Assembly (NCBI GenBank): GCA_965235115.1
Contig: OZ249444.1
Coordinates: 21,328,001-21,392,000, forward strand
Direction: 5' to 3'
DNA: 64,000 nt
Source: Laetmonice hystrix
Taxonomy: Eukaryota
Of the stretch, positions 193 through 26,049 are shown one piece after another (positions within the stretch are counted from its first letter, which is position 1; each line of letters starts with the position of its first letter). The notes beneath the pieces are model-generated. The model was given only the letters and a program-made list of their open reading frames with translations, searched no databases and was not told the DNA's origin. The translations under genes and the position numbers were made by a program.

Positions 193-672
193 CTATTCAA
201 TGGGTAGATATCTTGGAAATGGGCCACTATAAATAAGATGGGAAAGATAATATCTTGGAGATATTTCACCTCGCGGCGGGATATCTACTCGGAAATGTAT
301 ACGGTCACCTGCCTCTGCACTGAGTGCCAACTGTGCACATTTTGGACTGTGATAATGAATGTGGGAATTCGTGCACTGTGGACAAGCCTGGTATAATCGG
401 GTATGGGAATATGGAAGGTGGGAGAGATTACTTGGTTGACTGGAGCTCTGATAGAGCGCTGACCCCGGGATGAGGAAGCGGGGCATGGTCGCTATTGGAT
501 CCATATGGTGATGGCGGGGGAGGGGAGAGAGAGCCGACCAGATAGTGTACTCTGGCCAGCAGCCTGGGAGTGTAGGACCCCCAGGAGTCTGGCGGGGGTT
601 ACTAGGGTACTGGTGTCGATGAGGGGGAATGAAACCTGAAGTGATACCCCTACCCCAGCCCGACACGCCCAA
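193..672 (-). mobile_element. Decayed Penelope-like element, probable GIY-YIG C-terminus
   Basis: RLYQACPQC resembles PLE 'VIY.I.C..C'; the ORF ends at 193 immediately before the hammerhead-like relic. Weak protein similarity judged by eye. Confidence 0.4.
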
Positions 673-3050: not shown

Positions 3051-5549
3051 TTTACAGCTAACTCTCAGGATGCCGCTCTTATAAATGTGAAAATATTCCT
3101 TTGAGTCTGGAATTTCATTTGATGCGGAGGAGATAGGAACCCGATAAACCGGTACAGGAACTTCAGAGATTTAGCAAGCGAACCTTCCCCGTTTAGTGAT
3201 TGTTTTTTGATGAGTACGTTCTTGCTTCAAATTTGGCACCAGATTCAGGTGCAGCAAACGCGATAAGGAAGCCGTACCAGCATAACGGCCGTTGTGCCTT
3301 GAATTGTGTCAGTAAGTGGATTCCGATTAAAGGTACATGTATAGGGATTTGGGGACGCCCAAAGCGCCGCCTGGCGAGGCGCAGTGGTACCAGTTTCGGG
3401 CCCAGTCTGCTCAGTTAGTGTAGAGCTAGAGAGGTTAATTTCCTCATACAGGTGTTCCAGATACGAATCCTTTTATTGACGTGGAGAACATATCGGGAGA
3501 GTAGTAAGGCTGATAATGATAAGGCCCATTCACATGAAGTATCGCCAATTTGGGAGATAGGAAGAAAGCAACAATACGTTTTCAGCTTGACATTTCAAAC
3601 GAAAGGTCAGCTGTCCTTAAAGTACTAGGGAGGATACAAAAATAGAAAACACCTTTATGAATACACCTGAGTGGGTGTGCTGTAAATGGTAACGTGCACT
3701 TAGCTGAATGTCTTACAACACTAGTGATGCCTTGCCATCTCCCTGACAGAGAAACAGTTGTGGTTGATAATACCACAAACATTTCCAATGTACTAATAAC
3801 AACATGGAGTCCTGTCGCACCAGGTTTACGTAGAATGTTAAAATTAGTATTTTTATCTCGTGAATATGATCGTATGTGAGTGTACACTTAAGCTAATTTG
3901 TTACAGTGAAAACCTCTAAAAATGAATGTTGTGGTGGGAAACAGTCTCTTCAAGCTCTTTCCTGAAGATAAGGTTTCTAAAACCGGTTACAATCATTTTG
4001 ATAGTGGACATGATTCATCATTGATATCTCATTGATATCATCATTGATATTGATATCATTGATATCTCTGATAACGATATGCTGTTATGACCTTAGTTTG
4101 TATAAAATGATAAACTGTTCCTATCCAGTGTTTCATCTTCAATATCGACAGGTAACGCCTGTGACCTAGCTGGTTTTAATGACAAATAAGAACACGTTAT
4201 TAATTTCGTGCCAAAGTAAGTCCTTAGAAATGCCTTTTCTATGTAGGTTACGGATAGAAGTCTAACAGGAACCTTTGGCCTCCGATTTATTACAGAAATC
4301 AGATGCCACTTTTTCAATATCTTTAACAGACAAAATTGTATTTTTTTCTTCCAGGAAATTAAAGTAATACGAGCAGGTTACTCCTGTAGGTCCTATCCCA
4401 ATAATTAAAAGAATTCTCCATTCATTTTCAAGATGGTACAGGTAGTAGAAGGAGCTCATGTCGAAGAAGTCGTAGTGACGTCTGTGTTGTTGTAAAGATT
4501 AGGGACAGTGGTGGTAATGTTGAGGGAGATTGACTGAGCATTGATTGTCGGACCTGATGGGTTTGGTGATTGAAGAGATTTACTCCGTGAGCGAGGTGTC
4601 CATGTGGTGTTGTGGGTGCACGTCCTGTTCACCAGACTGTGACATCACCGGGGACAGGTGCTCCAGGGCGTGCTGCCTGGAGCCCCCCTCCGGACAGTCG
4701 GCCTGCAACCAGCGGGATGACTTGTTCATGGAAAGCCGAAGAATCCCAAGGAAAAAATCCAGGGGGGAAACGCCGCCCGGCGCCCAGGACACAGTCGGCC
4801 GACTGTGTCGAGTAGCAGTCGTGTTGATTTGTCGCCCGATTCAGATCAGGGTCGAGTAGAATCCAATAGATGGCCACAGTTAGATCGACGACCGGCCAAC
4901 ACGGCAGAAAATTGTTCCCTTCATTGGTGCCGCTTCCCGGAGTGCAGCGCGGGTATTTTTATTCCCACTCAGAGGCTCTTGCTGCCAGCTTTGGCCCGAC
5001 CAAGCGTTGCTGTTGTGGCTGGATGTGTCCAATGAATATTCGGCACGATTTATTGCTGATGCTGGTGGTAGAGTGGAGTTCGGGCTAGCTGGTATAATAA
5101 AGGTCGCGGTCTCAATTGGGCGTTGGTCTTATACACTGGTTGGGGTACGGGCGGCAACACCATGCCTATACACGGGTTGGAGTTATAACCCTTAAAACAC
5201 TGCTATTGATCTGACTGGGTGGGGAGGGGTGAGGCAATGGGCTGGAGGAGAGGGGTGGGTAGGGGGTACATTCTTCTCCTGGACATTTCACTGCCACCCT
5301 ATTTGGAAGCCAGACGTGCAGAATATCCCGAATCAATACGACTTTTTGGTTTAAATAAGCTTACACGACTGTGCCCCCTCGTCGGACCAATAGGATGTAC
5401 CTGGTACCTTTTATACAGGAACGAACGCTGACTGTTGAAGTTTTCAGATGTCGTATATATTTTGTCATGCGGTTTAGTTAATTCCCAGGTGTGGATGGTA
5501 GATAGGCCACCTGAGCCTGTATTAGACCTGGAGGCATTGAATAGATCAC

Positions 5550-7630
5550 GTGATATGAGTTCGAGGATAATTTGGTCCTGACATGATACTCATACATAAT
5601 AGATTGTTAAAAATTTGGTTTCAAAAATCAAGAGCCAGACTCTGCCGTCCATGGTGAGAATCATTTTCTCATATCCTTGGGCAGAACCGAGATGGCGGTC
5701 ACATTACACCTGGCAGCAGTTGACCAATGGTGGTACTTTGGAAAGGCAATTAACAGGTAACATAGGGATCCGTTACTGGCCACTTCAACACCTGGGCCGT
5801 TGGCGTTCACACGGCTCTCCCAGCCCAGTGTCACTTACTTACATAGAGGCTGGGGGCAGAACTTGACACCCAGGGGTGGGAACATTGACCATAAAAATAA
5901 TCCTCTGTGCTCATGTGTAGTCTCTGAAACCGGTTAGACCTGATATTCTCGGAGCTTCATTGCTTGGGGTGTATGTCATTGTAAATCATACAGGTATATT
6001 AGTGTGGGCAGATAAAGGTACATATGGCAGTGTAATGTTACCACTAAGTAATAGGAACGGCTCCAGGGTTAATCCCACGAAGTACACGACGGTGCTGTTG
6101 TTACGTGTGCCATTTAATAAATAGTGCATTGTCAATTACTTAGCCAGTATTAGTGGCTATAGAAGATTGTGTGTGTTTACCGCCCTGGGGAATACCGGTA
6201 GTTTAGTGTTGAGCAGATTAATGGGGAGCATGGCTTTATTCTCCCTAAGATTGATAGGAAAGGCACTGCCTTGAAGGATCAATGTGTAATGTTCGCCGGT
6301 ATGAGAGAATGCTGCAAGGCGCAGGGTGTCGCTATAGTATTTGGCGAAGTTTCCTACAGTCCCTGTTTCTTTAGGGGAGGGCCTCTTCAAAAAATCAGTT
6401 ACTACTAGTTTTATTTTTTCAGAATGCCTAACCCATGTTTCCTATGACCTGGCCTGCAGCTGGCAGAATCCTGTCCGTTTCCTAGGCGATGACCTGGCCT
6501 GCTGGCACAATGAATCCTGTCCGTTTCCTATGCGATGACCTGGCCTGCTGGCACAATGAATCCTGTCCGTTTCCTAGGCGATGACCTGGCCTGCTGGCAC
6601 AATGAATCCTGTCCGTTTCCTAGGCTATGCCCTGGCCTGCTGGCACAATGAATCCTGTCCGTTTCCTAGGCGATGCCCTGGCCTGCTGGCACAATGAATC
6701 CTGTCCGTTTCCTAGGCGATGACCTGGCCTGCTGGCACAATGAATCCTGTCCGTTTCCTAGGCGATGACCTGGCCTGCTGGCACAATGAATCCTGTCCGT
6801 TTCCTAGGCGATGACCTGGCCTGCTGGCACAATGAATCCTGTCCGTTTCCTAGGCGATGACCTGGCCTGCTGGCACAATGAATCCTGTCCGTTTCCTAAG
6901 CGATGACCTGGCCTGCTCAGAGTGCTGGCACAATGAATCCTGTCCGTTTCCTAAGCGATGACCTGGCCTGCTCAGAGTGCTGGCACAATGAATCATGTCC
7001 GTTTCCTAAGCGATGACCTGGCCTGCTCAGAGTGCTGGCACAATGAATCCTGTCCGTTTCCTAGGCGATGCCCTAGCCTGCTGGCACAATGAATCCTGTC
7101 CGTTTCCTAGGCGATGCCCTAGCCTGCTGGCACAATGAATCCTGTCCGTTTCCTAGGCGATGCCCTGGCCTGCTGGCACAATGAATCCTGTCCGTTTCCT
7201 AGACGATGACCTGGCCTGCTGGCACAATGAATCCTGTCCGTTTCCTACGCGATGCCCTGGCCTGATGGCACAATGAATCTTATTCGTTTCCTAGGCGATG
7301 CCCTAGCCTGCTGGCACAGTGAACCCTGTCCGTTTCCTAAGCTATGGACTGATGGCACATGTTTGTGCTGAGAAAACAGAGGATCCAGAAAACTACCTGC
7401 GGCCATCATGACTCAGCGTTTTGATTAGATAGATTTAATGATGTCTCTGTCTCACCCAAAGTGGCCACCAGGCCAGCAGGGCCCGGGCTCCCTCCCCCGG
7501 TGTGTGTGTGTGTGTGGGGGGGGGGGGGGTGTGTGCGTCCAGGGTGGATGGTCCTTATAACATGATTCCACGTGACAGAGTCGGTGTCGCGGTTGATTAA
7601 ACACGGACCGGGTTGGGAGGGGGTGGGCAC
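5550..7630 (-). mobile_element. Decayed Penelope-like RT, interrupted by the 46-bp minisatellite
   Basis: IRTIHPGR (about 7540; cf. KIHK..PGRP), FSHTGEHYTLILQGSAF (about 6270-6310; cf. FEFNGEHYLQ..GTAMG), YNDIHPK (about 5965; cf. LNSIHP), AQGYEKMIL (about 5660; cf. RGYP..LI); motifs are collinear. Confidence 0.5.
6437..7346. repeat. Minisatellite, 46-bp unit, about 19 copies
   Basis: Unit gatgacctggcctgctggcacaatgaatcctgtccgtttcctaggc; three adjacent 55-bp variants carrying a 9-nt insertion (about 6902-7066). Confidence 0.97.
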
Positions 7631-8859
7631 ACTCGGGCGGCCAGTTCTACTCCAGAGGTAGTCATTGGTTCATGAAATGGTGATTACTGATCATGCAGCG
7701 TCTGTTGATACGTTCTGCTTAATAAACCCGAGAATTGTCTATATCGGCGGGCTGAGATTTAAATCATAACCACGACCGTTAAACATTGCTCCTGTGTTCG
7801 GACCCCCCACCCCCACTAAAACAAGGACCACGAAAAACAAGATGCCAATTTACTTCTTGTAGGAGATTGTTTTGATTGTCGATTTGTTTTCATTCGTTTG
7901 TTGTTTCTTTTCCACAACAACAGCACACGAATGAAGATAGGCATGTCTCGTACGTAGATCTTTTGCTAACAATAATAGTAGTAATTTGTGCAACTATGTT
8001 ACACTTGTAATATAGTATAGTAGTAGTAATAGTACCGTATTAATAATTAAGGCAGCAACAGAAAAAAATGAGTCAGAGATTCACATTTTAGACAGTCTGA
8101 TTATAGGTACCAGTGTTTTGTGACGACTTCATCAGTGAAAAGTTACAGGATTGTTTTCACCAATCACAATGAAGGAATCTGATTGCAACTTTAATTAGTC
8201 CCGTTGTTATTTTATTAGTCACTAAATGGTCCGTTGTCTGCTTTGATTAGTTGTAGGTCTTGGATGGCCCCTCTTGGGCAGACAGAGTAATTACGATTTT
8301 CGCTCTTGTCCAACATTTACATATAGACCATTCAACGTTGATTATGCGCTCTAACTTACATGTAATGCGAGTTGGTGCTGTCTGGCTGCGGACAAGTTGA
8401 TTTCAATAAAAGAATCATTCAAATTCAAGCTGATAATGGTGGAAAATATATTTCCCCTACTCACGCCAGTGGTGTCTTTCTATATGAAGTATAAGGAACG
8501 TATTCAGGTCAGTTTTTACTCATTTCGAACAACTTCTACTTGTAAAATGCTCGAGATCTTTTTTTACATTAATTAGTAAGGAAATAAGGCCATTTTCTAG
8601 CTGATATATGTGTCATTCTGAACTAACGTGGTCAGGTCATATTTACGTATAAGTTTTGAATACGACGAAAAAAACCCCACTACACTGAGGTTTGAGTATT
8701 TTGTGATTCATCGTAATATTGTGTTAGCAATATAACAATATTATGATTCCTGGGCGCAGTTCTTAAGCTTAAGTTTTTGACAAACTGCCAAATTGGGCCC
8801 TGGTAATCTATCACAAACACCCGAACATGGGATCCATTAGTGGGTAACGTTGGTAATAG

Positions 8860-10660
8860 GTCATTTCAGTGAGATATTTCTGATGAATGTCACTTTCCCT
8901 GTGATCCTACAATATGTATTGTCATTATGACAGCCGGTGGTAAGCCATGTTGATGGTGAAGAGCACCCAGGTGGATCTAGTGCTCTGAATGTGGCTTTGA
9001 TGAGGCACCTCGGGCGGCGGGTGGTGGGCAGGCCGCCGACTGAGGCCAGGCGGGCCGGGGCGGCGGGAGGTGGGCAGGCCGCCGACTGAGGCCAGGCGGG
9101 CCGGGTCGGGGCGCTTTGTCGCCCAACCCTGTGACACAACCAACCACACATACATGGATATACAGGGCACCTATTTCTATATGAGGGAATTGATTGATTG
9201 CCTGAACAGATGCTACAACAGAGGTAGGCTTTAATACCAATAGACCATATTTAGTCAGGCCTTTGTGGCTTGTTTTAATTAGGTCTTTGGCAATTCAATG
9301 GTTTACTTCATAAACCCCATCTTCACCAGTCTAAGAAAGCGTGGATGATCTCGCCATCTCGGCGTCCATGGTGGTGGGGGGTGGGGTATGTTAATTAAAA
9401 ACAATGGGTCAGCAGGCAGCTGAAACAGGAGGCCTGACAAAAGGCCATTTGAACCAAGAAGCAGTGCTCCTAGTGGTAAAATGTTGGTGGCAGGGAGAGC
9501 AGGGCGTTTGGTGGAACCTGATGAAATGGTACGCCTGTAATGATGCTGCCCGAGGTGAAACCTTGTTACCTGTCAGCTGTACTTGTACTTACTACCAACC
9601 GTTTCCTACAGAAAGCATCTGGTCTGACCCCCAACTCTCTGTGAATGTACATGATAGGTATAATTTTTGTCAAGGACAACAACAGTAAGGTACCGACATA
9701 ACCTTGCCAACCCGATTATTTGATGGAACAGTTTGTGAGATGGTTGGAAGCAGAGATGTGGTGCCAAGCGGGATGTTCTTTACCTTCCAAGCCGCCTGTT
9801 ATATTTACATGCTGTCGGATCCACAGTGCACTATGGCATGTGACTGTGCATGCCTCATTGGGAGAACGCCCGTGCCAAGTACAAAACACAAATAGACGGT
9901 CGTGGGGTCGGGTTGGGGGTTTACCATCTGGTTCGACTGACAGAGTCAGGTGACGGGATGTTAGGTGATTGTGGGTCCATACCCAAGGGAACGTTGTAAC
10001 ATACGGAGCATGACCGTCATTGTAAGTCAGGTCTATAGAATAGTATAGGGGAAGTTGATCCTAAGCCTTAAGTCACAAACCGCCAGTGGTCTTGTGGTCT
10101 TTTCGATCAAGCCTGAGGGCCTTTTCAAAATATAAGTGGTTCTCTCATGCTATCTTACTCTGGCCATTTCATATTTGCTTTCATTTACTTTAGAGTGTGT
10201 GAGATTCGAGGGTTTTACGGCATGGCGTCAACTAAGGTCATTTCACGGCGATATTTTCTTTTGAGAAAATGAATTATTGTCAAACAGAACACAAAATTCG
10301 AAGGGTCCATTTCGGGCAGAGGCTCAGAAAATAGTCTTTACTTAGCTCCACACTGCTATAGACTACATGTACCCCGGTAATTTGTAAGCGGAAATTGACG
10401 GTCGTATGACGAAGGAGTACTTTACCTGTTGAAATAGCCCTAGGCATGAACGTCCAACTGTTGGGACTATGCCAACTTGCCCTGTTTTAAAGTTGATTTC
10501 CATATTTTTTGGTCTGTGCCTAATACCTCTTCCTTTGTGAAGTGTTTTTCTTCCGTCGGCCATTTGGAGCCACCTCTAACGTTACAGGCGGAGTTTACCG
10601 TAAATACGGCTGTTATATGAGGACCGGAGGGGTGGTTGTTAGGGGATTTAGGTTTGTGCA
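8860..10660 (-). mobile_element. Decayed Penelope-like element, N-terminal region and RT
   Basis: KPKSPNNHP and HFTKEE (10467-10661), TVVVLDKNY (9659-9686; cf. KG.AVVVLDK.DY), GALYIH (cf. SLYTNI), NDNTYCRITG (cf. ND.FYLQ..G); collinear but with insertions. Confidence 0.5.
9012..9105. repeat. 46-bp GC-rich tandem duplication (2 copies)
   Basis: gggcggcggg..ggtgggcaggccgccgactgaggccaggcgggccggg repeated at period 46. Confidence 0.9.
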
Positions 10661-13149
10661 ATATTATATGTGAGGGTTAGGGGATATAGATTTTGTCCTT
10701 ACCGTGGAGTATTATGTCAGGGGTTGTGGGTTCTCTATGATGGAAGAGGTTGTTATATTGTCAGATCAACACAAATGGATGTAGTTCCTGTCAGTTGTAA
10801 TATTTATGGTTGATGAATGGTGATGGGTCACTGCAGTCACAGTAACATACAGCGTTATCGAATGCCGAACACGGGAAAGGCAAAATCACAATGTTGGGCT
10901 TGAAAGCTATCAAATAGGACTGACCATGCAGAGGTACATGTGGCATTATGGAAGACAATTGTCACTGCGCCAACATGGTTTTACTGTTATCATGGTTTCA
11001 CCCGTTTACTAACATCTCAAACAATAACAGCACAGAGGTGAGCTGGTCCTGAAATGGTGCTAGAAATAAAAAGGCAACATGAGTATGGTAAAAATTTGTT
11101 TAGAGTTTGAATTTGGTGTAGTTCAGGGGGCCAAACACAGGGTCTACATAGGTCGTGAGATGAGGCAGCAGTCAAACTGAACCTCCTGCTTCTTATGACT
11201 GGCTATGCATACAAACACTACAGTCCTCATAACGATCAGGAGCTGGTTTTAGGTTTCTTATTGATTCCATGAGGGAGAAACATCGCCATCTGCGCAGTTG
11301 AGTGGAAACCTGCAGGCAATGCTGTTAGGACTACCGGTATTGCATATTCTGACGGGAAACTTTTCAGTGCTCTACACACAATCTCTTTTTAACGTTAATT
11401 TCTTTCTTTTAAATCGCGTTGTGGATTGAAGGGGTGTAGGAGAATCTAGGTTATTGTGGCTGAAGACGATTAGGAAACCAGCAAGTGGAGCTGGAGGCGA
11501 GGTTTGTCCAGGGCCCGTTCTAACTATGTGCTAACAGATCACTGATACCGAGTGAACGGGACACCACTACAGTACGCCACCTCAAACAGTAGACACCTCC
11601 CGGGGCAAGGCACCTCTCGCCAGCGGCCGGCCACCAGGTCGCCGGCAAAACTCGGATGTATAATGGGTTTGGGGCATTTCCAATCATTTATACACCGCCA
11701 TGTGAAAAAAACAACAGCAAAAACTACAGGGAAAAAAAAAGAAAGCGAAGGAAAAAGGTAACGAAGGAAAGAAAAGAAAGAAAGCAAGATTCAGAGGTCA
11801 GGGCCAAGATCGACCCAACATTGTGAACAGAAGCACTTGTCGACATAGATTGCCGTAAACCAAGACTCACGCACTTCTGTCTACCTAGGTTATAGCAAAC
11901 AATCATGTCATCCTCGAATGTAGAATGGTAAGGTTGGCACTGGTAATGGTTAAATACCAGTTGACCAGGATGAGTGATGTGATCGTGTTGTTATTATTCA
12001 TGAGTACTACAGTGGAGACATCACTTTCAATTTACGCATCTCCAGACTCATTATAACCTTTGGTTTACTGCCTAAACGTCGCACACCCACATTAGTCGGG
12101 TAATTAGGCTTAGTTTGTTTTTGTATCATCCCTCTCAAATTATTCTTTATCATTTATTTTCCCTCTGGGGCATAATTAAAAATCAAAGTTTTCTATCGCA
12201 ATGTCCTAGTTATGGAGATTTATCCGAAATTGCTCATAGGGGAAATGCTGGTAAATATTGGGACAGTATCCTATAATTGCACTAGGTCGATTCTGAACTA
12301 GGGCAGTTCGTAAGTACTAGGAGTGATGCATTGTTTGCCTTGTATAGAAGGTTTCAACTGGACACATTTTCCGCGAATACCTAGCTCATTCGATCTTGCA
12401 ACTTTGCATGTTGGGGAAGTGATCGGTTAAGAAATGCGGTGAATGACTGCGAAGATTGACTGTGGAATGACAGAATCTTGGCGCTCCGTAAATGTGAAGA
12501 GGATAAGTAATCAAGGGAGTGTTTAGTATGCATGTCCCGGCCCAGCAACCAAAAGGCCCTCCAGACTTAATTACAATGGCGGGGTCTCTTTTTGTCTGGT
12601 AATTAATTTACTGAGAGGTCAGTAAATTAGAGAGTCTCGATTATACTCCATACTTATGAATGATGGATGAAGGAAGGAGCAAGGACGTTTCAGAATGAAG
12701 TCCTACCGAGATGCCAACAAGTAATTGGTTGGGATGCTGACGGTATGGTCCGTATGGGCTGGTGGGAGATTTCCACATGTGCATGGCGATCAAAAAGACT
12801 TGTAATCAAAGAGGAAAAATTCGGGATCGTCATTGGCTGCAGTGGAGGGATAGTGCAGGTAGCGGGGGGTTAGTGAGTCATGGCATTAACTTAATGAATA
12901 GACTAGGCTCCTTAAAGACGGCCGCCGTGGTGGGAGGGGAGGGAGAGAGAGGGAGGGAGAGGGAGGGCATCAGTTCCCTGGACCATCTCTCCCTGTTTGA
13001 TACACGTTATACTCGGTGTCACAGGGAGAGTGGGAGGTCCACTCCATGTATTACCTCCGTGAATAACATGGCCTGGGTCGAGGAGATAGTCCCGGCAATG
13101 GGAGTCGGTGGTTGGCCCAGTATAGGAAGCTCGGGCGCCTCAGAAATAT

Positions 13150-13720
13150 GATGTGGCAGCCCTATTACGGTGCTCGTTATACGTCTAACATGTGCCAAGC
13201 CTGATTACATTGAGACTGAGCGGAAGGACCTGTGCTCAGATCTGTACTGTTATCACGGGGCACTTGTACCTACAGTCAGGCCATTTATTTCATCATAGAA
13301 TGGGCAGCAAGCTATACACACAGGCCTGACGCTGAGGGTCTCTCAATGGTTTGGTTATCATTTCAATGGGCTTGTTGTCTATGTGTACCGTATTCTGTTT
13401 GTATTTGTACCGATGTGTGTGCCCAAATTGTGGTGGTATTTTCGATAAACTCGGTCAAGATTTCCAAGAAGGTAGAGGGAATTAAAAATCAGTGTTCCAG
13501 CGGCTGCTTGTTCAGTCCCTGGAGCCCAGCTACCTAAAATATTGCTGCAGTTCTAAAATATATCTAATTGAATTATCCGAACAGATAAATTTGATAAAGA
13601 TGATTGAACCCTCATTAGATTGGATTAGCACAGCCCTTGCACATGAAACCTTGCAGAAATTACACTGATTTGGGTCAGCCACATAATGATATCTTTGAAT
13701 AACATGCATTTTGACTGTTA
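13150..13720 (-). mobile_element. Decayed Penelope-like element (RT thumb, linker, GIY-YIG start)
   Basis: IKFICSDNS (cf. RRICSD), ELQQYFR*LG (cf. EL..YF.KRGY), DRVYRKYHHNL (cf. DRIP...TYHPNL), NVIRLGTC*TYNEH (cf. NVIYLITC...EH). Confidence 0.55.
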
Positions 13721-14608
13721 TCATATTTGGGCTCGAAAATATTTATCAAAAAGGCAGAGTTGTTGAAATATTATTAACTGTATGTTTTCTCTAACCGGCA
13801 ACAGTACATTACCGGCCTGGCTCACTGAGAACTCCTGTGAAATATTTATGACTGATTGAGGTGGGGCGGGAAGCTAATATTTAATGATTCCTCCTCACTT
13901 GCCGCCTTCTCTGGTCTTAGTCATGCATACAAAAAGAGAGATAAACGACTCTTTCTGTCTGAAAGCGGTGAAGGACTGAGGCCGGCCGACTTCAAGACAT
14001 CAAGTGTTGACTGTGGTTTGAATTCAAGAAACCAAGTGAAACAGGGAATGCCAGCTTCATCAGTCTTGTGTGCCACTTCAAGGCTTTGGAAAGGCTAACC
14101 TAAACAAGCAGGCAGGACCGGGAGGAAAAGAATATATGCAGTGGGCAAGTTGATGGAAAAGTTGGCTGGAGGGATTTTAGGTTTGGTCCTCTGTAGTCAA
14201 ACAGTAGAATTGTAACTGTGCTGACAGATGTGTTAGGAGACCAAGGCTGTCATAAAAAAGAAGATCGTTTGTAGGTTCTGTGAGAGTGGAGGAAAAAACA
14301 ACTGTGTGAAAAACTACGAGATACAGTTAAGGCAACTGTCCCCCGGCCGGCGGTGCAACTGTCGCCCCGGCTGGCGGTACTTCACTATAGTGGATGACAC
14401 CGTATATTGCTGATGTGAATGAAAGAGAGTACAAGAAAATTATTATTTACAGGTTTTAAAAACGGAGATTTGCCTTACGAGTCTACATGTCTAGGCTAGA
14501 GTCATCAATAATGTGTTTACCTATAATCGTGTTTCGAGAAGTGTTCAAGTTTTCGCTAAAGGAAAAAGTTGCTTTTTAGTCCCTGTGATAAGTAGGTAAA
14601 GTCGTCCG

Positions 14609-14698
14609 TTCATATTTTTCTGCTTTATTTGTTTCAGGTAAGTGACTCAGCTCAATGCCTTATAAATCTACGATTCCTTATCAGCTATCGTGGTGAGT
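14609..14698 (+). promoter_or_regulatory. Candidate recursive splice site 1 (AG|GT at 14636-14639) with 55-nt cryptic exon 14638-14692
   Basis: ttcatatttttctgctttatttgtttcag|gtaagt, then a second donor tg|gtgagt at 14693. The frame ending in this CAG has a stop just upstream. Confidence 0.55.
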
Positions 14699-15194
14699 AA
14701 ATAGACCTACTTTATGGTGTTATACTGTCACAAGTAAAATGTCGAGGGCAGACACCTGATGTATGAGGTATCAGTGTCTGAAATACCGGGGACGGAATGT
14801 CGTATGGAATATGTATAATTATTATATGTTAAAGATATTTGTCTGATTGGTTTAAAAGATGTTAAACGTCAGTTAACTGTACAGATAATAAACACATGTA
14901 GGCAAATAAATTGCCTCTTATAAAACAGTACCATGTTGACCTTTGAGAGTTCATCCATTTGCAAGTGTTCGGCACTCTCAGGTAAAAACGGGGGTTTCCG
15001 GTCCAGTTGGAGTAATGTGACTGTTGGCTGATAGTTGAAAGGAAGACTAAAACCCTACTTCTTCTTGGCCTTTCTTGTTTCCTCAAAGAGATACAGGATA
15101 CGACTTAATATTTAATAGTTATGGGTCACCTGGGAGGTGAAGCCAGACCCAGGTGTGTGTTGGAAAGATGTGGGAACGGTGAAACGATATCCCC

Positions 15195-16095
15195 GTGGGG
15201 CTGAGTCTGTATGGTATAATGGTGGCCCGGGAGTTGGGTTATACTCTGAGTCTGTATGGTATAATGGTGGCCCAGGACTTGTGCCGGGTAGGCTGGGTGG
15301 GGTGGTCTGAGTCTGTATGGTATAATGGTGGCCCAGGACTTGGGTTATGCTCTGAGACTGTATGGTATAATGGTGGCCCAGGACTTGGGTTATGCTCCGA
15401 GTCTGTATGGTATAATGGTGGCCCAGGACTTGTGCCCGGTAGGCTGGGTGGGGTGGTCTGAGCCTGTATGGTATAATGGTGGCCCAGGACTTGGGTAGGG
15501 TAGGGTAGGGTGGGTGGGGTCTCTGAGTCTGTATGGTATAATGGTGGCCCAGGACATGGGTAGGGTAGGGTGGGTGGGGTGGTCTGAGCCTGTATGGTAT
15601 AATGGTGGTTCAGGACTTGGGGCAATGGGTAGGGTAGGGTGGGTGGGGTCTCTGAGTCTGTATGGTATAATGGTGGCCCAGGACATGGGTAGGGTAGGGT
15701 GGGTGGGGTGGTCTGAGCCTGTATGGTATAATGGTTGCCCAGGACTTGGGTAGGGTAGGGTGGGTGTGGTGGTCTGAGTCTGTATGGTATAATGGTGGTG
15801 CAGGACTTGGGTAGGGTAGGGTGGGTGGGGTGGTCTGAGCCTGTATGGTATAATGGTGGACTGGTGGTCCAGGACATGGGCCGGGTAGGGTGGGGGGGGG
15901 GGGGGGGTCTGAGCCTGTATGGTATATGGTGGACTGGTGGCCCAGGACTTGGGCCGGGTAGGGTGGGTGGGGTGGTCTGAGTCTGTATGGTATATGGTGG
16001 ACTGGTGGTCCAGGACATGGGCCGGGTAGGGTGGGTGGGGTGGTCTGAGTCTGTATGGTATAATGGTGGTGCAGGACTTGGGTAGGGTAGGGTGG
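15195..16095. repeat. Compound G-rich minisatellite, 15 copies of a constant core with variable G-rich spacers
   Basis: Core tctgag(t/c)ctgtatggtataatggtggcccaggacttgggt, followed by (agggt)n-gggtggggtgg spacers; unit about 45-75 bp. Confidence 0.95.
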
Positions 16096-17695
16096 GCGCA
16101 GTGGGTAGATCGAGCTGATAATGTCGAGAATAACATTGGTCGTGAATAGTGTCAATCCTGACGGTGGACTGACTGTCTGACATTGAGCTGTCATCCAGCT
16201 ATCAGTCTGTGTGCTGGGCATACAGATATATCGGTGGGTTTATTATACAGACGACTGTGTATTAAATACATCTACCCCCATCAGTAAGTGGTGAGGGGGG
16301 GGGGGGGGGGTTGCTGAATGCAAATGGGAACCCTTTATTGTTTATGTACACAGATGAATATTTATGATTCCCATTATACTAGTGCACATTTAGAGTCCCT
16401 ATTGCTGAGCATATTCAATTCTCATTGCTAACATATTCATGAATGTTTTATAGTCCCGGGACTCGTGCATATATATTTATAGTGCTCAGTGCTGGTCACA
16501 TGTGAGCTATCTAAAATTTATGGTGCCCTTAGACTAACAAGTGTAATATTATATTATATTCATGGCCCCCTCGGCTGTTACAAACAGTGTTAATGGTTCC
16601 AGAAACTGGCAAGCTATGACCTGGCAGAGTTAATAAAATATCCTTGCTAATTCATTCTCGGATTACGGACTGACTCTGTTCATGAAATGAGCTGACCTAG
16701 CTCATTTGGCAGAGGCTGGTTGTGAGACATGCACGGAATATCAGATGAGCCGGGCGCTAATTGTAGGTGCCACATAGCATGTCGTCTCCGATGGTTATCA
16801 TGACGTGGTATTTAGCTAGGGGCGTCAGCTGTAGCCCACCCAGCAGGGGCAGGAAGCCGGGTGGGTACAGACAGACGCCGGGCTGTGGTGGGACAGGCCT
16901 GCCTAGACTGGGTTACCGAGAATATCGGGGGGATATCTATACATTAGTACCTCATACCAAGTACGTCAATATAAATGACAGTGACAACTCAACATGCAAG
17001 CAGTGAGATTATAGCAGTTCATAATTCCCATCGTTTCAGTGCTGCTATAATGCTATAATATATTCAAAGATTCACAAAAGGCATAAATTTCGAACAAGGG
17101 AACCTCACTCGTAAAATCTTGCTTCCTTTAAAGCTGTCTGCTGGTGTGTGGCATGCCAGGGCTTATTCTTGAGTCTAATCCATGGAAGTCTTTTGCTTAT
17201 TACTGGCCCTATTGTGATCCATTTTGACCACCCTTTTCAGTTGATGGCGACCAATCCTGATTCATTTTGACGGGTCTGACCAGTCTACCAGTTGATAGAA
17301 GCCATTGCTTCATTTAGACCAGTTATCCCAGTTTTTACCGGCCAACTCTGATCCATTTAGACCTGTCTTTCCTATTTTGATGATCCTTCTAGGCCAGTCC
17401 CCTGCTGACTGTCTGACCGTCCAGTAGACTTTTCCCGGAGATCATTGCATGGTTCCAGGACCGAAAGTTCTAGGTAAATAGTGCCTGAGACAGCGTGCGC
17501 CTTGCTTGACATGATAATGATGATACTGAGAGATGGCAGGAATGGTTCCCAGCAATGACAGTAACATGGATTCTCATTGGTTGGCTATCCACAGATACGA
17601 GCAAGGCCCTCAGGCTGGAATATACGACGGCTGTTCGCGGTGTCACCTCCCACGGAATAGCGGCGGATACAAGGCATTGCTGTCTTGTATGCCTG

Positions 17696-18025
17696 AACTC
17701 CCTGTCCGAGCTCCCCGCCTGAGCTCCCTGTCCGAGCGGTCCGCCTGGGCTCTCTGTCCGAGCGGTCCGCCGGGCTCTCTGTCCGATCTCCCCGCCTGAG
17801 CTCCCTGTCCGAGCGGTCCGCCTGGGCTCTCTGTCCGATCTCCCCGCCTGAGCTCCCTGTCCGAGCGGTCCGCCTGGGCTCTCTGTCCGATCTCCCCGCC
17901 TGAGCTCCCTGTCCGAGCGGTCCGCCTGGGCTCTCTGTCCGATCTCCCCGCCTGAGCTCCCTGTCCGAGCGGTCCGCCTGGGCTCTCTGTCCGATCTCCC
18001 TGTCCGATCTCCCCGCCTGAACTCC
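17696..18025. repeat. 52-bp minisatellite made of two alternating 26-bp monomers
   Basis: ctccccgcctgagctccctgtccgag alternating with cggtccgcctgggctctctgtccgat; about 6 dimers. Confidence 0.93.
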
Positions 18026-18984
18026 CGGTGCCACTTCCTACATGAGCTTCTTGTCAGAGAAGGTGGCTAAGAGAAGGTGGCTAAAGTTGATAAATCAGAC
18101 TCCAAGACACGCTTTGAGATAGAGAAAGAGGTTGCTAAAAACTGAATTGGATGGTTTCAAGTGTGTCTATCGTTTATTATCACACAGTGGGAGTAATGGT
18201 ATATTACTGTACAATGGAGGACAGTTATAATTTACAATGTTGTAATTTTTCTTGTATTATAAGGGATAATTGGAGCTCTCCAATATGTTACTCAGGTAGT
18301 TAACAGATTATTGTGAAAGCCTAACTTGATCTTGTGTGACCACTGCTGAGCTATCAGGTGAGATCCAGTGTTGGTGACACGTCGCATCCTTTATGGTGCG
18401 GGTGACGTGTCACTTGATCATGTCACCCTATCCAAGCCGTTTTCACGGAGTATAGCTTCTTCATTAAGCTTCGTATCTTTATGCCAACTGACTTATTACT
18501 TCTCTACATGATGGCTTGCCATGAATCACATCCACCGTGTGCCAGCGCCGCCGAGCCACAGTAACTGCTGACAGGCCTGATATTAAAACAGGAATAAATC
18601 TGCCGGGATACGCTCCTGGTCTGACCTTGATTTATGGGAAGCCATCGAGAGCAAAATCAGCTAACAATACGTGTCATTTACCAGGAGCAGGTTCCATAAA
18701 ACCCACTGTGCACTTCTCCATCGTTTCTGGTTTATATCGTTTACCAATCCGTTGGGCTCCGTATTGTGGTTGCCATGAGGTGACACAGACACAAAGATTT
18801 GGCATGATAGCAGCTTTTTTTCCGAGGGGGGGGGGGGCTGTGAATGGGAGTAGAGATATTTAACATAAAACACTCGATTTGACTTGCATGCTGGCTGTAG
18901 AACCACTGATATTGGCAGAGTGACGTCCTTTATCACTGTGGACAGAGGTCCCAGAGGATGGGCCTTGCATGAATCAAGTGGAAG

Positions 18985-19085
18985 AGAGATGTGGACAAGT
19001 AGAGGCAGGCAAAGAGAGAGGAAGAGAAAGAACAGAGAGAGAAATAATGAGAGGGAGAGAGAAAGAGGGGAGAGAAAGGTGCAGA
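18985..19085. repeat. AG-rich low-complexity tract
   Basis: gagagaggaagagaaagaacagagagagaaataatgagagggagagagaaagaggggagaga. Confidence 0.8.
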
Positions 19086-21289
19086 CAGACTTGAGGAATA
19101 AAAGTATACAGCCTACTCCCAAAAAGGATTTCGGGCTCCGAACTATTCATACTGGTCGTTGATCTCAGAATTACCTACTTCTCTGTAACCGGTCTTTAGT
19201 TTGAACATGGTTCGCTGCTAGAGCATCGGAAAATGAACGCCATCAGATAGGAGGAAGCTCAGACATCGATACCAAACCATGGAAACAGAGATGTATTTAG
19301 ATTTGGTGAGATGATAGAAAAATACTGATATATTGTTACTTTAGACGGCCTTGCGGGCAGGCTTACCGAAATAAATACCCAACAATAACGAAGTCTATCT
19401 GGACGGTGGAGTTCTGTATGCGAGCTCGGCGATTAGGTTGCCAAGACCTGGTTTGGTAGTAACAAGTTTATTTGGCTCTGACCGACTTCAAACTCCCTCA
19501 TTACGTGCCATTAGATACCCAACACGCAACAACCTCCTTCTATTATTAGCCTGTGGAAATATCAAGCGGCCATGTTTACAGTCATTTCACTCTGAAATTG
19601 GAATTGGCACTGGTACTTGGAAGATGCGCTCTAACTGAAAATAAGGCTCGGGGGCGCTTGGAATCGTTGGCAGTATTGTGGATGGGTGTCGTATGATTTT
19701 ATGGAGGGTGTAGGATACAGGGTGTATATCACCCCCCCCCCCCCACCCTCCAAATGTATGGGGGCACAACATTTGGTCTGAGTAGGTCGCCGTGGTCCGT
19801 CGTTACGTGGTGGTCTCAGGCTGGTATTATAATGAGTGTGTGGAACCCCTCGGTAATTTGTCATGATTCTATGTTGAACAGAAATGTCTAATTGAATGCA
19901 GATTGAGCACATTAGAGAGGAAATGGTTGGTTTGTTAATTTAAGATGTGTTTTTCAGAGCAGTCAATGAAGACATGTAAGGAGAGCCCCTGAAGCTGTAA
20001 ATAGTCATTGGTTGACAGCAGTACAGTACACAGCAGTATGTGTAACTCGACATTGTCGAGATGAGAGTCTCTGTAGGTCGCTGGTAGTGAGCCCACTACA
20101 AGTAGACGACTCTCCTCCCAATCCTACAACCACCATGAGTGAGGCAGGTCGTCAATGAGGCTTCAGTCAGGCTTCAGATGGGTACTTTGTATCAGCTAGT
20201 ATTTATAAGAAGCATCCTTTAAAAAAACAAGGCCACAAGTGCTGATTAAAGACATGGTGATAATTATCCATTCTAGGAGTGTGAAAGAGGCATTAATCTT
20301 GATCCAATGACAATATGCGATGAATACTGACGTCAATATTTGACAATGCTCAGCACTGAGCTAGTTTCGTTGAACTTCTGGCTGAGTACTTCAGATGTTC
20401 GACATTCATTCATTTCGCGTGTTCTGCGAAGTAGAACCTCTCAGATTTAGTGAGATTAGTACCAGTAGTAAAACCCTGATCCAGTGAGCAGTGGCTCCTA
20501 ATCCGAGGCCAGCTCATACCGGTGGTAGTGTTGGCTGGGAAACCCTGTGAAAACCATTTGTCCAGACTTCGCTCCGATCCAGGGGCTAATGGCGGTTCAA
20601 TTTGGAGCCAGTATAGCGTAGAAACCCTTTAGAAGTCACCAAAGAAATCCATTTTGATTTCTTTATATTCTAAATAACATTTATTTTCTTTGCCGTGCTG
20701 AGGTATGGTAGAAACATTGAATTGAATTTCTCCAGGTTTCTTTAAGCAAATGGTGGCCGCCCTGGCCAGCTGAATGGGTTTCCTAGTTTATCAGGGCTTG
20801 ATACGTCAGTCACGAACACCTAAAGGTCGCCACGTTTTTTAGGTCGGGATGTGACTTGTGAGCCTAAAGTTAGCGGTGCAGCTTCCTTTTCTTCCCACGG
20901 CACTGACAAGGGTTAATAATAGGTGCCTGAACCGAACGCGATTATACCTGAGTTAAGTGACTGTCCTGAATGATTAACCTGCTTTTTCGCGTTTTAAGGT
21001 CACCTGTGATGTCGTGGCTTAAAATGTCCTGTAGCCAGCGTTTTAGTTTTAAGTCAGCTGTATAAAAAATAAAGCCAGGAAAACAGGGAAAGAGGAGTGT
21101 GCTTTGGGAACATAATGAGCCGGTGGGAAATTAGTACCCGTAGTGAATGTTGATAAAATGTTGTGAGGGGAGTGAGGGTGAGGATAGGGGGTGTGGGGGT
21201 GGGGGGTGGGGAGTGCACAAGATGGGATGGCTTGTGCGCGAACGAGTCCTGGCGGTGGATGAAGGAAGCAGAGGACTCCAAACCTGTCA

Positions 21290-21720
21290 CTTACGGTTCA
21301 CGTCATCATTAGCATTCCTCTCACCCTTAATGGATGGACACCCTTTCTCCATTAAGTGCTCCTTGTGATTTTTTCTGAACAGAAATATCTTTTTTATGAA
21401 CCAGTCATTCCGTTTTCCCGCCGAAGGAGGTGGATGTACTTGTAGAGTGGTTAGCTTTCTCGGGCGTCCTTGAGACATTTGTCGGTACCCAGTCTCGTTA
21501 CGTATAGTATTGTACAGCCTTGACCTTGGCACCCAATGTCGGTGAGTTGATGTTTTAGATTTAGCACCAGGTTGTCGCCTGAAGAATCTCCGAGCAGTTG
21601 TCGTAATCACATGTTAATGGCGTTCAGTCTCTCGATGATTGAAGCATGGATCAGAGCGACCAAAACCACCACAGCGGCTGGGGAGAGAAAAAAACAAACA
21701 GGCACTCCCAGCCAGCAACA
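21290..21720 (-). mobile_element. Decayed Penelope-like RT N-terminal part
   Basis: AAVVVL, LRQLLGD (cf. GAVVVL...RQLSD), PRSRLYNTI...QGRP (cf. PR..RFY.LPKIHK..GRP), CPSIKG (cf. LPSYIKD). Confidence 0.45.
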
Positions 21721-23628
21721 GTTAATAATTGCTGGAGCTTTTCTTACCAGGCAGTGATACGTTGGAGTGATTTGTGAAGAATTCTTGACATTTCAAACGT
21801 GTCCTTGAATATCGTAACAGCCAACTTTACCTCCTGGCAATAGATTAAAGTCGAATAACCCTTAAAGGGACACATCCACTTAGTACGATCAACGATCCTG
21901 TAGCTACGCTGGTAAGAATTTTTTTTTTTGGGGGGGGGGGGGAGAATCTGAATATAATATATCCCTATTCCTACTATACTAGCCCAAAACCTAATACTAC
22001 CCCTTACATTGGGTACCCAAATATCTTATTCCTGCCCCCAGTGCTGCCCCTAACTATGGGAGAATAACCCTTAAAGATGCAACTTAAGAACCCTGTTATC
22101 GCTCTCTGTATGAGTTTGTAAATGGTAAGTCCGCTGGGTTGTGAATCCACAGAGTGCTGACGTCGAGGAGTATTGGAATCTCCATCCCATTGTAGTAATA
22201 GCTGGGTGGTCTAAGACCCAGGCAGTTCAAATGGTGGTATGGCTTGGCTGTGACCCGTCACGGTCTCAGATGGCGGGGAGAGAAACGGTTACCAGATACC
22301 TCAGACCCGCCTACTATTACCCGCCCGTGACGCATGTCGGAATGCCGCCCAGGTTTTTGCATGTCGAGGTATTGTTCAAAGGGAGCCAAGGTACACACAT
22401 CTGTGTGGTGAGGTATAATCAATCTCTCCTCCCAACCCGTGTGTAAGACAGAACAATAGAGCTGGGTTGTGGGTGTTGTTATCAGGTGATCAACCCAAAG
22501 GTCGCCTCGTCCTGAAAGTCGTCAACAGCCATCTGTGTACCTCGGAATTCATGTTGGCCATCAGGGGTTCCGGCAGGATTTCACCTTTTGGGGGGTGGGG
22601 GGGGGGGGGGGGAAGGGGTGGATTTTTATTCGAGAAAGACTCTCAGACAACTTTTGGGGGAGTAACTAGTCTCGGCCCAAAACAATCTTGAAGGAAAACC
22701 TGACCCAATTCTCGACAAGGGTTTGTTCACCCATCACCGAGTTTTAAAACGCCTTTAATTGTCAAGAGTTAACAAGTCAGGATGTTACCAAGGAGCCAGA
22801 CATGTAGAGGGCCCAGCCTTTCCTTAGCCATGCACCATGAAGCAAACTTTGTAAGAAGAGTTATCTCCTAAAATATAGATACCCTCTAGGGCCTCACGAG
22901 GAGTCTGCCCGGGCTCTCCGTGTCTGTCATTTCATTATTGATGACATACCGTGGCAAACAATCGTTTCTTTAGGTATTAAGAGAATCCCAGATGTGCGCT
23001 GAAGATGTCCAAGTTGTTAAGAGATCGATTCCACCACGAAGCAGACACCATTGACTCGGATTTCAGTGTGGGATCTCCTTGGGTTGAATAATTCACCAGG
23101 CCCAGCTGTTCACAAAGCGCACCTGGCGGATGGCCAACCCTCTGATGCATGGCCAGGTGTAAAATAGTCAATCCACACAGGACCTTTAAGAAAGTTTCTC
23201 ACCCCTGTGTATAGACACCCTACCGTTAGAACGATAAATTTAATGTTTTCTATTTTTTTAAGGTGAAGGGGATGTCAACGGGGGCCGATCAGTAATGGGT
23301 GCAGAAAATGACTTTAAACTCAGGGAGGTCCCGGTGGGCGAGGGGTGCGGGGAATCTGTGTGAAACTGATTGATGGAAGGTTAGAAACACGGCAAACAAA
23401 GACAACCAGCCACAACAAAATGTACCCGGTCGTCGTGTTTCCAATGCCAAGTACGAATTCCTCCCCTACGCTTGGAGAAACAAGGCAGTCCGAGTTGGTA
23501 ATGCAAACACATATTTGTGGCAAAGCAAACACCAGCAGGAGGTCGTCGGTCGAGACGAGATATCTTCAGGTATAGAGAGAAAGTTTGGTGGTGTAGGAGT
23601 GAACTATATACGGCTGGGAGCTTCTACA

Positions 23629-24336
23629 GGAATGATTTAGAAAGTGACTGTTTCCCAGTGTAGCCCTGTTAATATCTGCCCCCGGAATGGTTTAGAAAGT
23701 GACTGTTCCCCAGTGTAGCCCTTTTAATATCTGCCCCCGGAATGGTTTAGAAAGTGACTGTTTCCCAGTGTAGCCCTGTTAATATCTGCCCCCGGAATGA
23801 TTTAGAAAGTGGATGTTTCCCAGTGTAGCCCTGTTAATATCTGCCCCGGAATGGTTTAGAAAGTGACTGTTTCCCAGTGTAGCCCTGTTAATATCTGCCC
23901 CCGGAATGGTTTAGAAAGTGACTGTTTCCCAGTGTAGCCCTGTTAATATCTGCCCCCGGAATGATTTAGAAAGTGGATGTTTCCCAGTGTAGCCCTGTTA
24001 ATATCTGCCCCTGGAATGGTTTAGAAAGTGACTGTTTCCCAGTGTAGCCCTGTTAATATCTGCCCCTGGAATGGTTTAGAAAGTGACTGTTTCCCAGTGT
24101 AGCCCTGTTAATATCTGCCCCTGGAATGGTTTAGAAAGTGACTGTTTCCCAGTGTAGCCCTGTTAATATCTGCCCCGGAATGGTTTAGAAAGTGACTGTT
24201 CCCCAGTGTAGCCCTGTTAATATCTGTCCCCGGAATGGTTTAGAAAGTGACTGTTCCCCAGTGTACCCTGTTAATATCTGCCCCCGGAATGGTTTAGAAA
24301 GTGACTGTTCCCCAGTGTAGTCCTGTTAATATCTGT
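23629..24336. repeat. Minisatellite, 55-bp unit, about 13 copies
   Basis: ggaatggtttagaaagtgactgtttcccagtgtagccctgttaatatctgccccc, with 54-bp variants. Confidence 0.97.
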
Positions 24337-24600
24337 GAGTTGGCTTTATGGTGTATGAATACATTTATTTGGTACTCTTGATTTGATGTTATTTTAAATA
24401 AAAGACAAAGTTGATTTATTGCTTTATTGGTTGTAATATCTGGCAATGACACGAAAGATCTGTATAGGCGATGCCAATGCATTGGTCAGTAGGCGATGTG
24501 TATGCATTGAGAACATTGATAGAGTGTAGATAATAGAGAAGGCCTGCTGTCTGATCGGGTCCCGTGTACCGGGACGAGGAGGTGTGTATTAACAAGAAGT

Positions 24601-24631
<31 letters not shown>
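24601..24631 (+). repeat. Pure poly-G tract (31 nt)
   Basis: Longest of many G homopolymers in the window. Confidence 0.9.
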
Positions 24632-24632
<1 letters not shown>

Positions 24633-25947: not shown

Positions 25948-26010
25948 CCCCCCCCCCCCCCCCCCCGGCCCCGACCCCGGCCCCGGCCCCGGCCCCGGCC
26001 CCGGCCCGGG
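25948..26010. repeat. Poly-C run followed by (CCCCGG)n hexamer repeat
   Basis: cccc...ccggccccgaccccggccccggccccggccccggccccggcccggg, i.e. GGGGCC on the - strand. Confidence 0.9.
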
Positions 26011-26049
26011 CTGGAGGTTGTGGTATCGTGACCAAGGCCCCGGCCATGG

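What the first reader, a model, noticed from the sequence alone, without database searches (positions are those of the whole stretch)
14609..14698. Second candidate recursive splice site sharing an identical 11-nt core with the first
Seen: ttcatatttttctgctttatttgtttcag|gtaagt followed 55 nt later by GTGAGT. The 11-mer tgtttcaggta is identical at 14630 and 40831. A by-eye scan of + strand AG|GT junctions in 1-55.6 kb found no other site combining a long pyrimidine tract with a full GTRWGT donor. Inference: two ratchet points 26.2 kb apart divide the intron into manageable segments. The 55-nt exon would shift frame if included in a coding context, so it could also act as a poison exon.
Basis: partly seen in the sequence, partly recalled or inferred. 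Interest (0 to 1): 0.7.

Follow-up and report, generated by a model that had tools for sequence, protein, structure and literature searches.

The report
Predicted recursive splice site, FARP intron
Deep in a 79-kb intron of an invertebrate FARP gene, an intron-end signal directly abuts an intron-start signal; it is the middle one of three evenly spaced sites, so the intron is probably cut out in four steps as in flies, but there are no RNA data to prove it.

Summary
At 14609-14637 a strong pyrimidine tract ends in CAG, fused to GTAAGT, and GTGAGT follows 55 nt later. The 11-mer recurs only at 40831.

The site lies on the sense strand of a 78,725-nt intron. The intron runs from the first coding exon of a FERM-RhoGEF-PH (FARP) gene, 23 kb upstream of the window, to the exon at 55670.

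A scan of the whole intron found a third site of the same build 3.9 kb upstream of the window. The three sites cut the intron into 19.1, 18.5, 26.2 and 14.8 kb. Each has TT at -5/-6, a stronger tract than any real acceptor of the gene, and a downstream donor at +39 to +65. None exists on the antisense strand or in 105 kb of flanks. A Markov simulation expects 0.035 such sites; 3 were seen.

Genome-wide, strict versions of the motif are enriched. They form 9 same-strand pairs within 100 kb and no opposite-strand pairs.

This matches Drosophila ratchet points with cryptic RS-exons. No RNA run exists for this organism and no related genome could be reached, so use of the site is inferred, not shown.

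The scan has already reported similar sites in at least seven other genes of this genome. This is a new member of a known kind.

The parts
1..55669 (+). The part of the 78,725-nt FARP intron that lies in the window. The intron starts at window -23055 = G000:C10:21304945.
   Evidence: tblastn of four FARP proteins puts the first coding exon at window -23157..-23056 and the next at 55670. The two are contiguous in the homologues. GC skew is positive on + throughout.
14609..14637 (+). Acceptor half of ratchet point B. It has a pyrimidine tract (17 of 20 Y), TT at -6/-5 and CAG at 14635-14637. A candidate branch A lies at 14612 in a TTCAT context.
14638..14643 (+). Donor half of ratchet point B (GTAAGT). 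After exon 1 is joined here the donor reads CCG|GTAAGT.
14638..14692 (+). Predicted cryptic RS-exon of 55 nt. If kept in the mRNA it shifts the frame and gives a stop codon in exon 2 (predicted product about 78 aa).
14693..14698 (+). Donor of the RS-exon (GTG|GTGAGT), the competitor of the regenerated donor.
40819..40838 (+). Acceptor half of ratchet point C (16 of 20 Y, TT at -6/-5, CAG). A candidate branch A lies in a CTAAT context at -27.
40839..40877 (+). RS-exon of site C: 39 nt, in frame, no stop. It starts with the weaker donor GTATGT.
40878..40883 (+). Donor of the site C RS-exon (GAG|GTAAGT). It is stronger than the regenerated CCG|GTATGT.
55670..55774 (+). Second coding exon of FARP (starts QKAMGSVLF, FERM N-lobe, phase 0). 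It is the final acceptor of the intron.

Best explanation
Position 14637|14638 is an intronic recursive splice site (ratchet point) of the fly type. It is the second of three in the 78.7-kb intron between the first and second coding exons of a FARP (FERM-RhoGEF-PH) gene.

Inferred mechanism:
- As the intron is transcribed, exon 1 (ending CCG) is spliced to the acceptor at window -3912. That junction regenerates a donor, CCG|GTAAGT.
- The regenerated donor is then spliced to the acceptor at 14637, which regenerates the same donor again.
- The next steps go to 40838 and finally to exon 2 at 55670.
- The intron therefore leaves in four pieces of 19.1, 18.5, 26.2 and 14.8 kb.

Each acceptor is probably recognised by exon definition through a short cryptic RS-exon (65, 55 and 39 nt) bounded by its own donor. 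The regenerated donor then outcompetes that donor, so the RS-exon is discarded. If competition fails at site B, the 55-nt exon stays in the mRNA, shifts the frame and makes the transcript a nonsense-mediated decay target.

Shown here: the sequence architecture, its strand and position in the gene, its non-random occurrence, and the genome-wide recurrence of the motif. Inferred: every splicing step.
For: 1. Position. The sites lie on the sense strand between two exons that are contiguous in FARP homologues. The gene continues downstream with RhoGEF and PH exons. The homologues have the FERM-FA-RhoGEF-PH-PH architecture.

2. Architecture. Only three of the 10 sense-strand AG|GTRWGT junctions in the intron have at least 16/20 pyrimidines. 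All three also have TT at -6/-5, CAG, a YTNAY at -22 to -27, and a GTRAGW donor 39-65 nt downstream.

3. Controls. There are 0 such sites on the antisense strand of the intron and 0 on either strand of the other 105 kb examined.

4. Chance.
- A third-order Markov simulation expects 0.035 sites per intron; no simulation out of 1000 reached 2.
- The full architecture is expected 0.001 times; 3 were observed.
- Using real 20-mer frequencies (about 1% with at least 16 Y), the expectation is about 0.1.

5. Spacing. The spacing is more even than random cuts give: P(min segment) = 0.015 and P(max segment) = 0.037. The mean segment of 19.7 kb matches the 17.95 +/- 9.0 kb reported for Drosophila (10.1101/006163).

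6. Tract strength. The tracts are stronger than at the seven authentic acceptors of the gene that were examined (16-17 against 9-14 of 20). TT at -5/-6 is the hallmark of 99.5% of fly ratchet points.

7. Origin. The three sites share nothing beyond the core, so they are convergent signals and not repeat copies. Both window loci are single copy.

8. Genome-wide.
- TGTTTCAGGTAAGT occurs 27 times against 4 for the reversed control.
- 14 of the 27 have at least 15/20 Y (about 5% expected), and 12 of 13 that are independent of this site have sense-type GC skew.
- Among 80 strict sites there are 9 same-strand pairs within 100 kb and 0 opposite-strand pairs, where about 0.5 of each is expected.

9. 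Literature.
- RP-site enrichment in long introns is published for four insects and a sea urchin (PMC2773006).
- Cryptic RS-exons of about 50 nt that are usually out of frame are published for flies (PMC8605326).
Against: There is no RNA evidence of any kind. No RNA run is on record for this organism. The three runs that hold the stretch are DNA contigs of one individual, with even depth and no joint or loose end at 14637.

Conservation in related species could not be tested.

The genome-wide excess of the strictest motif is modest: Y8-N-CAG|GTAAGT gives about 51 non-tandem sites against 26 in the control.

At site C the RS-exon donor looks stronger than the regenerated donor. That site may therefore behave differently, which weakens the picture of one uniform series.

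Confidence: 0.7

Rival explanations
1. The sites are ordinary alternative cassette exons (55 nt and 39 nt), included in some transcripts and acting as poison or insert exons. The GTAAGT at their start is never used as a donor.
For: Each site has an acceptor plus a donor 39-65 nt downstream, which is the layout of an exon. The 39-nt exon at 40839-40877 is in frame without a stop, and its own donor is the stronger one.
Against: An ordinary exon starts with GTRWGT about once in 500 times, yet all three strong acceptors in this intron do. Two of the three exons would destroy the reading frame. FARP homologues have no insert between the exon 1 and exon 2 residues. The genome-wide same-strand clustering concerns the fused acceptor-donor motif specifically.
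Confidence: 0.1
2. It is a chance juxtaposition of splice-like motifs in a long, T- and G-rich intron, with no function.
For: The plain AG|GTRWGT count (10 sense, 5 antisense) is what base composition predicts. Across 627 Mb, a dozen or so full-architecture sites are expected by chance somewhere.
Against: Three full-architecture sites sit in one intron where 0.001-0.1 is expected. There are none on 289 kb of control strand. The spacing is even. The motif shows genome-wide enrichment and strand-specific clustering.
Confidence: 0.05
3. The sites are functional splice-signal elements with another role, for example decoy exons that hold the spliceosome or U1 to suppress cryptic splicing or premature polyadenylation in a long intron. 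The intron would not be removed stepwise.
For: The same sequence statistics apply as for the main explanation. Strong donors spaced along a long intron could also serve U1-dependent protection. This is inference from general knowledge, not tested here.
Against: That role needs only donors. It does not explain why each donor is fused to a stronger-than-normal acceptor with TT at -5/-6, which is the specific signature of ratchet points.
Confidence: 0.1

Closest known systems
Drosophila intronic ratchet points (zero-nucleotide recursive splice sites: Ubx, kuz, luna; Duff et al., preprint 10.1101/006163; Joseph & Lai 2021, PMC8605326)
   Same: An acceptor fused to GTAAGT, a prominent pyrimidine tract, TT at -5/-6, location deep in a long intron on the sense strand, several sites per intron, segments of about 18-20 kb, and a cryptic RS-exon of about 50 nt with its own donor that is usually out of frame.
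   Different: The animal is different: not an insect. The best named homologue is molluscan, and earlier notes of this scan call it an annelid. The host gene, FARP, was not mentioned in the papers read here. Nothing is validated by RNA, and conservation is unknown. One of the three sites has GTATGT and a stronger RS-exon donor.
Vertebrate recursive splicing through RS-exons (Sibley et al. 2015, as summarised in PMC8605326)
   Same: The model of exon definition of an RS-exon followed by donor competition. Inclusion of the RS-exon can act as a poison exon.
   Different: Vertebrate long introns show no sense-strand enrichment of fused sites (ratio 0.9-1.5, PMC2773006), and only a handful of fully suppressed intronic sites are known. 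Here the density is 3.8 per 100 kb in this intron, which is fly-like or higher.
Computationally predicted RP-sites in long introns of sea urchin, bee, beetle and mosquito (Shepard et al. 2009, PMC2773006)
   Same: The same kind of evidence: sense-versus-antisense enrichment of fused acceptor-donor motifs in introns longer than 50 kb of non-vertebrate animals.
   Different: That study covered no spiralian, gave no individual sites, and did not consider RS-exons.

Membership tests
Fly-type intronic ratchet point (recursive splice site) | Acceptor AG directly fused to a consensus donor (AG|GTRAGT) | tested here: met
   CAG|GTAAGT at 14635-14643. The same holds at window -3912, and CAG|GTATGT at 40838.
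Fly-type intronic ratchet point (recursive splice site) | A pyrimidine tract more prominent than at ordinary acceptors, with TT at -5/-6 | tested here: met
   17/20 Y against 9-14/20 at the gene's seven real acceptors that were examined. TT at -6/-5 at all three sites. The criterion comes from 10.1101/006163.
Fly-type intronic ratchet point (recursive splice site) | Lies on the sense strand of a long intron and splits it into segments of roughly 10-30 kb | tested here: met
   A 78,725-nt intron with segments of 19.1, 18.5, 26.2 and 14.8 kb.
Fly-type intronic ratchet point (recursive splice site) | A short cryptic RS-exon bounded by a downstream donor | tested here: met
   GTGAGT at +55; at the sister sites, donors at +65 and +39. 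Background for such a donor in that range is 5.7%.
Fly-type intronic ratchet point (recursive splice site) | Sense-over-antisense enrichment beyond chance | tested here: met
   3 sense sites against 0 on 289 kb of control strand. The Markov expectation is 0.035. Genome-wide same-strand clustering is 9 pairs against 0.
Fly-type intronic ratchet point (recursive splice site) | Exon-to-ratchet-point junction reads, segment lariats, and a sawtooth read depth in total or nascent RNA | not testable with these tools
   No RNA run exists for this organism. The only holders are DNA contigs.
Fly-type intronic ratchet point (recursive splice site) | Strong conservation of the AG|GT core relative to the flanking intron | not testable with these tools
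   No related animal genome could be reached. Heterozygous variants of the one sequenced individual leave 14574-15197 untouched, but gaps of that length are common in the 6 kb examined, so this says nothing.
Poison (NMD-inducing) cassette exon | Inclusion introduces a premature stop codon | tested here: met
   Adding the 55 nt shifts the frame and gives a stop in exon 2. The 65-nt sister exon carries an in-frame stop. The 39-nt one does not.
Poison (NMD-inducing) cassette exon | The exon is actually included in a fraction of transcripts | not testable with these tools
   No RNA data.

The most novel reading that the evidence does not exclude
Fly-type recursive splicing, with ratchet points and cryptic RS-exons, is a genome-wide system for long introns in a spiralian animal. 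This FARP intron would be removed in four steps. Together with insects and sea urchin, that would place ratchet-point splicing in the bilaterian ancestor, with vertebrates as the lineage that largely gave it up.
Probability: 0.6. Interest if true: 0.5.

Novelty: new member of a known kind. Interest (0 to 1): 0.35.

Why it matters
If the sites are used, the animal removes a 79-kb intron in four co-transcriptional steps by the mechanism worked out in Drosophila. That would extend experimentally testable ratchet points to an animal group in which the held literature has no report. It would also give three precise sites for RT-PCR or lariat mapping.

For annotation, it warns that the 55-, 39- and 65-nt "exons" should not be built into gene models.

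On its own this is one more instance of a pattern the scan has already met in several genes of this genome.

Tried and rejected
RNA evidence. The look-up of sequencing runs returned only three runs of one sample, none on record as RNA. Laying them showed even DNA-like depth, heterozygous variants, and no joint or loose end at the site. This shows neither use nor disuse.

Polymorphism as a proxy for constraint. The variant-free stretch 14574-15197 is no longer than other gaps in the same 6 kb. Rejected as uninformative.

Repeat or transposon origin. Both loci and the 6 kb around site B are single copy. The three sites do not align beyond the core. Rejected.

The 11-mer identity as evidence. Rejected as circular, because it is acceptor end plus donor start.

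Upstream coding exon inside the window. A regular-expression search found none. tblastn placed it 23 kb upstream.

Fetching two other same-strand clusters (C3 at 8.31-8.39 Mb, C11 at 18.29-18.31 Mb) to inspect their introns. I used the 3-kb loci of the pattern search instead.

First Markov simulation. It timed out and was rerun.

The program is not available offline, so I used pyrimidine counts and consensus matches instead.

Nested plus-strand gene using these acceptors. The ORFs tested in the intron have no Pfam hit, except the antisense GT47 gene. No support.

Full report
**Observation**

The sequence is as described.
- A pyrimidine-rich tract runs from 14609 and ends in CAG at 14635-14637.
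- GTAAGT follows at 14638-14643, and GTGAGT lies at 14693-14698.
- The putative exon 14638-14692 is therefore 55 nt.
- TGTTTCAGGTA occurs twice in the window, at 14630 and 40831, both on +. The shuffle expectation is 0.05.

A mechanical scan for AG|GTRWGT finds 7 junctions on + and 2 on -, close to what base composition predicts. Only 14637 (17/20) and 40838 (16/20) have at least 16 pyrimidines in the 20 nt before the acceptor. The by-eye claim holds.

The 11-mer identity is not independent evidence. It is the end of an acceptor plus the start of a donor, and both sites were selected for those.

**Gene context**

Stop-to-stop frames show FERM-domain exons on + from 55670 onwards.

A profile-free search with one 52-aa exon returned full-length relatives. 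Two of them have the FERM-FA-RhoGEF-PH-PH architecture of FARP proteins. One is a Littorina saxatilis protein.

tblastn of four relatives against the window plus 120 kb of upstream sequence places the first coding exon at window -23157..-23056. That exon starts MSSPNSPQ, ends FQVP, and has the donor CCG|GTAAGT. The next exon is at 55670 in phase 0. The two are contiguous in the homologues.

The gene continues downstream on the same strand with RhoGEF and PH exons, to at least G000:C10:21424791.

The intron is therefore 78,725 nt, not 55.6 kb. The reported site lies well inside the FARP transcription unit on the sense strand. GC skew is positive on + across the whole window, as expected for one long sense strand.

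**A third site**

Scanning the entire intron gives 10 AG|GTRWGT junctions on the sense strand and 5 on the antisense strand. Three sense junctions stand out, and all three read TGTTTCAG|GTA:
- window -3912 (G000:C10:21324088, outside the window), 16/20 Y
- 14637, 17/20 Y
- 40838, 16/20 Y

No antisense junction exceeds 12/20.

Across all 184 kb examined, on both strands, these are the only junctions with at least 16/20.

Each has TT at -6/-5, a YTNAY branch-point candidate at -22 to -27, and a donor-like GTRAGW downstream: +65 (CTG|GTAAGA), +55 (GTG|GTGAGT) and +39 (GAG|GTAAGT). Their pyrimidine tracts (16-17/20) are stronger than those of the seven authentic acceptors of the gene that were examined (9-14/20).

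**Chance**

| Quantity | Value |
|---|---|
| Real 20-mers on + with at least 16 Y | about 1% |
| Expected strong-tract junctions out of 10, from that frequency | about 0.1 |
| Third-order Markov model, 1000 simulations: expected sites per intron | 0.035 |
| Simulations reaching 2 sites | 0 of 1000 |
| Expected sites with TT at -5/-6 and a donor at +30..+80 as well | 0.001 |
| Observed, in both cases | 3 |
| Random intron positions with such a downstream donor | 5.7% |

The three cuts give segments of 19,144, 18,549, 26,201 and 14,831 nt. These are more even than random cuts: P = 0.015 for the smallest segment and 0.037 for the largest.

The sites are single copy. They share no similarity beyond about 10 nt either side of the junction. 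They are therefore convergent signals, not copies of a repeat.

**Genome-wide**

- TGTTTCAGGTAAGT occurs 27 times against 4 for the reversed control. Two of the 27 are in this intron.
- An ordinary exon ending in CAG could produce some of these. But 14 of the 27 have at least 15/20 pyrimidines upstream (about 5% expected). 12 of the 13 that are independent of the present site have positive, sense-type GC skew in the motif's orientation. 9 of the 27 have a donor within 20-120 nt downstream.
- Y8-N-CAG|GTAAGT gives 67 hits (about 51 outside one tandem array) against 26 for its control. The purine version gives 49 against 43. The excess of the strictest form is real but modest.
- Among 80 strict sites there are 9 same-strand pairs within 100 kb and no opposite-strand pair, with about 0.5 of each expected. 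This is what sites tied to long transcription units predict.

**Comparison with what is known**

- Duff et al. (preprint 10.1101/006163) describe fly ratchet points as fused acceptor-donor sites with a more prominent pyrimidine tract. TT at -5/-6 is present in 99.5% of them. There are several sites per long intron, and segments average 17,953 +/- 9,039 nt. Here the mean is 19.7 kb.
- Joseph and Lai (PMC8605326) show that such sites need a cryptic RS-exon of about 50 nt with its own donor. [quoted passage not shown]
- Shepard et al. (PMC2773006) found sense-strand enrichment of such sites in long introns of four insects and a sea urchin, but not of vertebrates.
- The held literature has no paper linking recursive splicing to annelids or spiralians.

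**Consequences of RS-exon inclusion**

- The 55-nt exon shifts the frame and gives a stop in exon 2.
- The 65-nt exon of the upstream site has an in-frame stop.
- The 39-nt exon at 40839-40877 is in frame without a stop, and its donor (GAG|GTAAGT) looks stronger than the regenerated CCG|GTATGT. That site may behave as an expressed RS-exon or a plain cassette. FARP homologues show no insert there.

**What is missing**

No RNA run is on record for the organism. The three runs that hold the stretch are DNA contigs of one individual, with even depth, roughly 1% heterozygosity, and no joint at the site. No related animal genome could be reached. Use of the site is therefore inferred from architecture, statistics and analogy.

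**Verdict**

- A probable recursive splice site, about 0.7.
- It is the middle one of three in a 78.7-kb FARP intron.
- The mechanism is known, and this is a new member of that kind.
- The scan has already reported the same architecture in other genes of this genome: ephrin, Eph, RBMS, dachsous, PLC-beta, srGAP and TCF. I used those notes only as leads. The genome-wide recurrence was tested independently here.

Noticed in passing
G000:C10:21324057-21324159 (window -3943..-3841; L003:6057-6159, L030:1477-1579): A third ratchet-point-like site just upstream of the window. It has a 16/20 Y tract, TGTTTCAG|GTAAGT, and a 65-nt cryptic exon with an in-frame stop, followed by CTG|GTAAGA. It belongs to the same series but cannot be given in window coordinates.
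   Followed up: yes
window 15201-16096: A G-rich minisatellite with units of about 45-151 nt, mostly 61-68 nt, lies 560 nt downstream of the site. DNA contigs pile up there to 5-10 times the normal depth, with many loose ends and poly-G joints. It is either length-variable or present elsewhere in unassembled copies. It also explains the three overlapping minus-strand ORFs at 15239-16221.
   Followed up: partly
window 51770-53416 (-): An intronless 548-aa ORF with an Exostosin GT47 domain (E = 1.7e-27) is nested antisense in the last segment of the FARP intron.
   Followed up: partly
G000:C3:8308746, 8365605, 8391795 (+); C11:18294368, 18311227 (-); C1:19095783, 19189686 (-); C3:30686283, 30756116 (-); C12:13993258, 14091327 (-): Other same-strand clusters of strict acceptor-donor fusion motifs, 17-98 kb apart. 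They are probably further recursively spliced long introns. Their host genes were not identified.
   Followed up: partly
L017 (G000:C3:855643-858656) and L022 (G000:C5:32621670-32624683): Two of the 27 genome-wide 14-mer hits share their flanks, and L022 has an open frame of about 500 codons ending at the motif. This is probably a transposon family that carries the motif by chance.
   Followed up: no
G000:C12:26313684-26316377 (-) and G000:C7:8365141-8366628 (+): Tandem arrays whose unit contains CAGGTAAGT preceded by a pyrimidine run (C12) or a purine run (C7). They inflate raw motif counts and were collapsed in the analysis.
   Followed up: no
window 56723: An authentic FARP exon starts with GTACTT directly after TTTTCAG. 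It is a real coding exon, so an AG|GT junction alone is not diagnostic.
   Followed up: no
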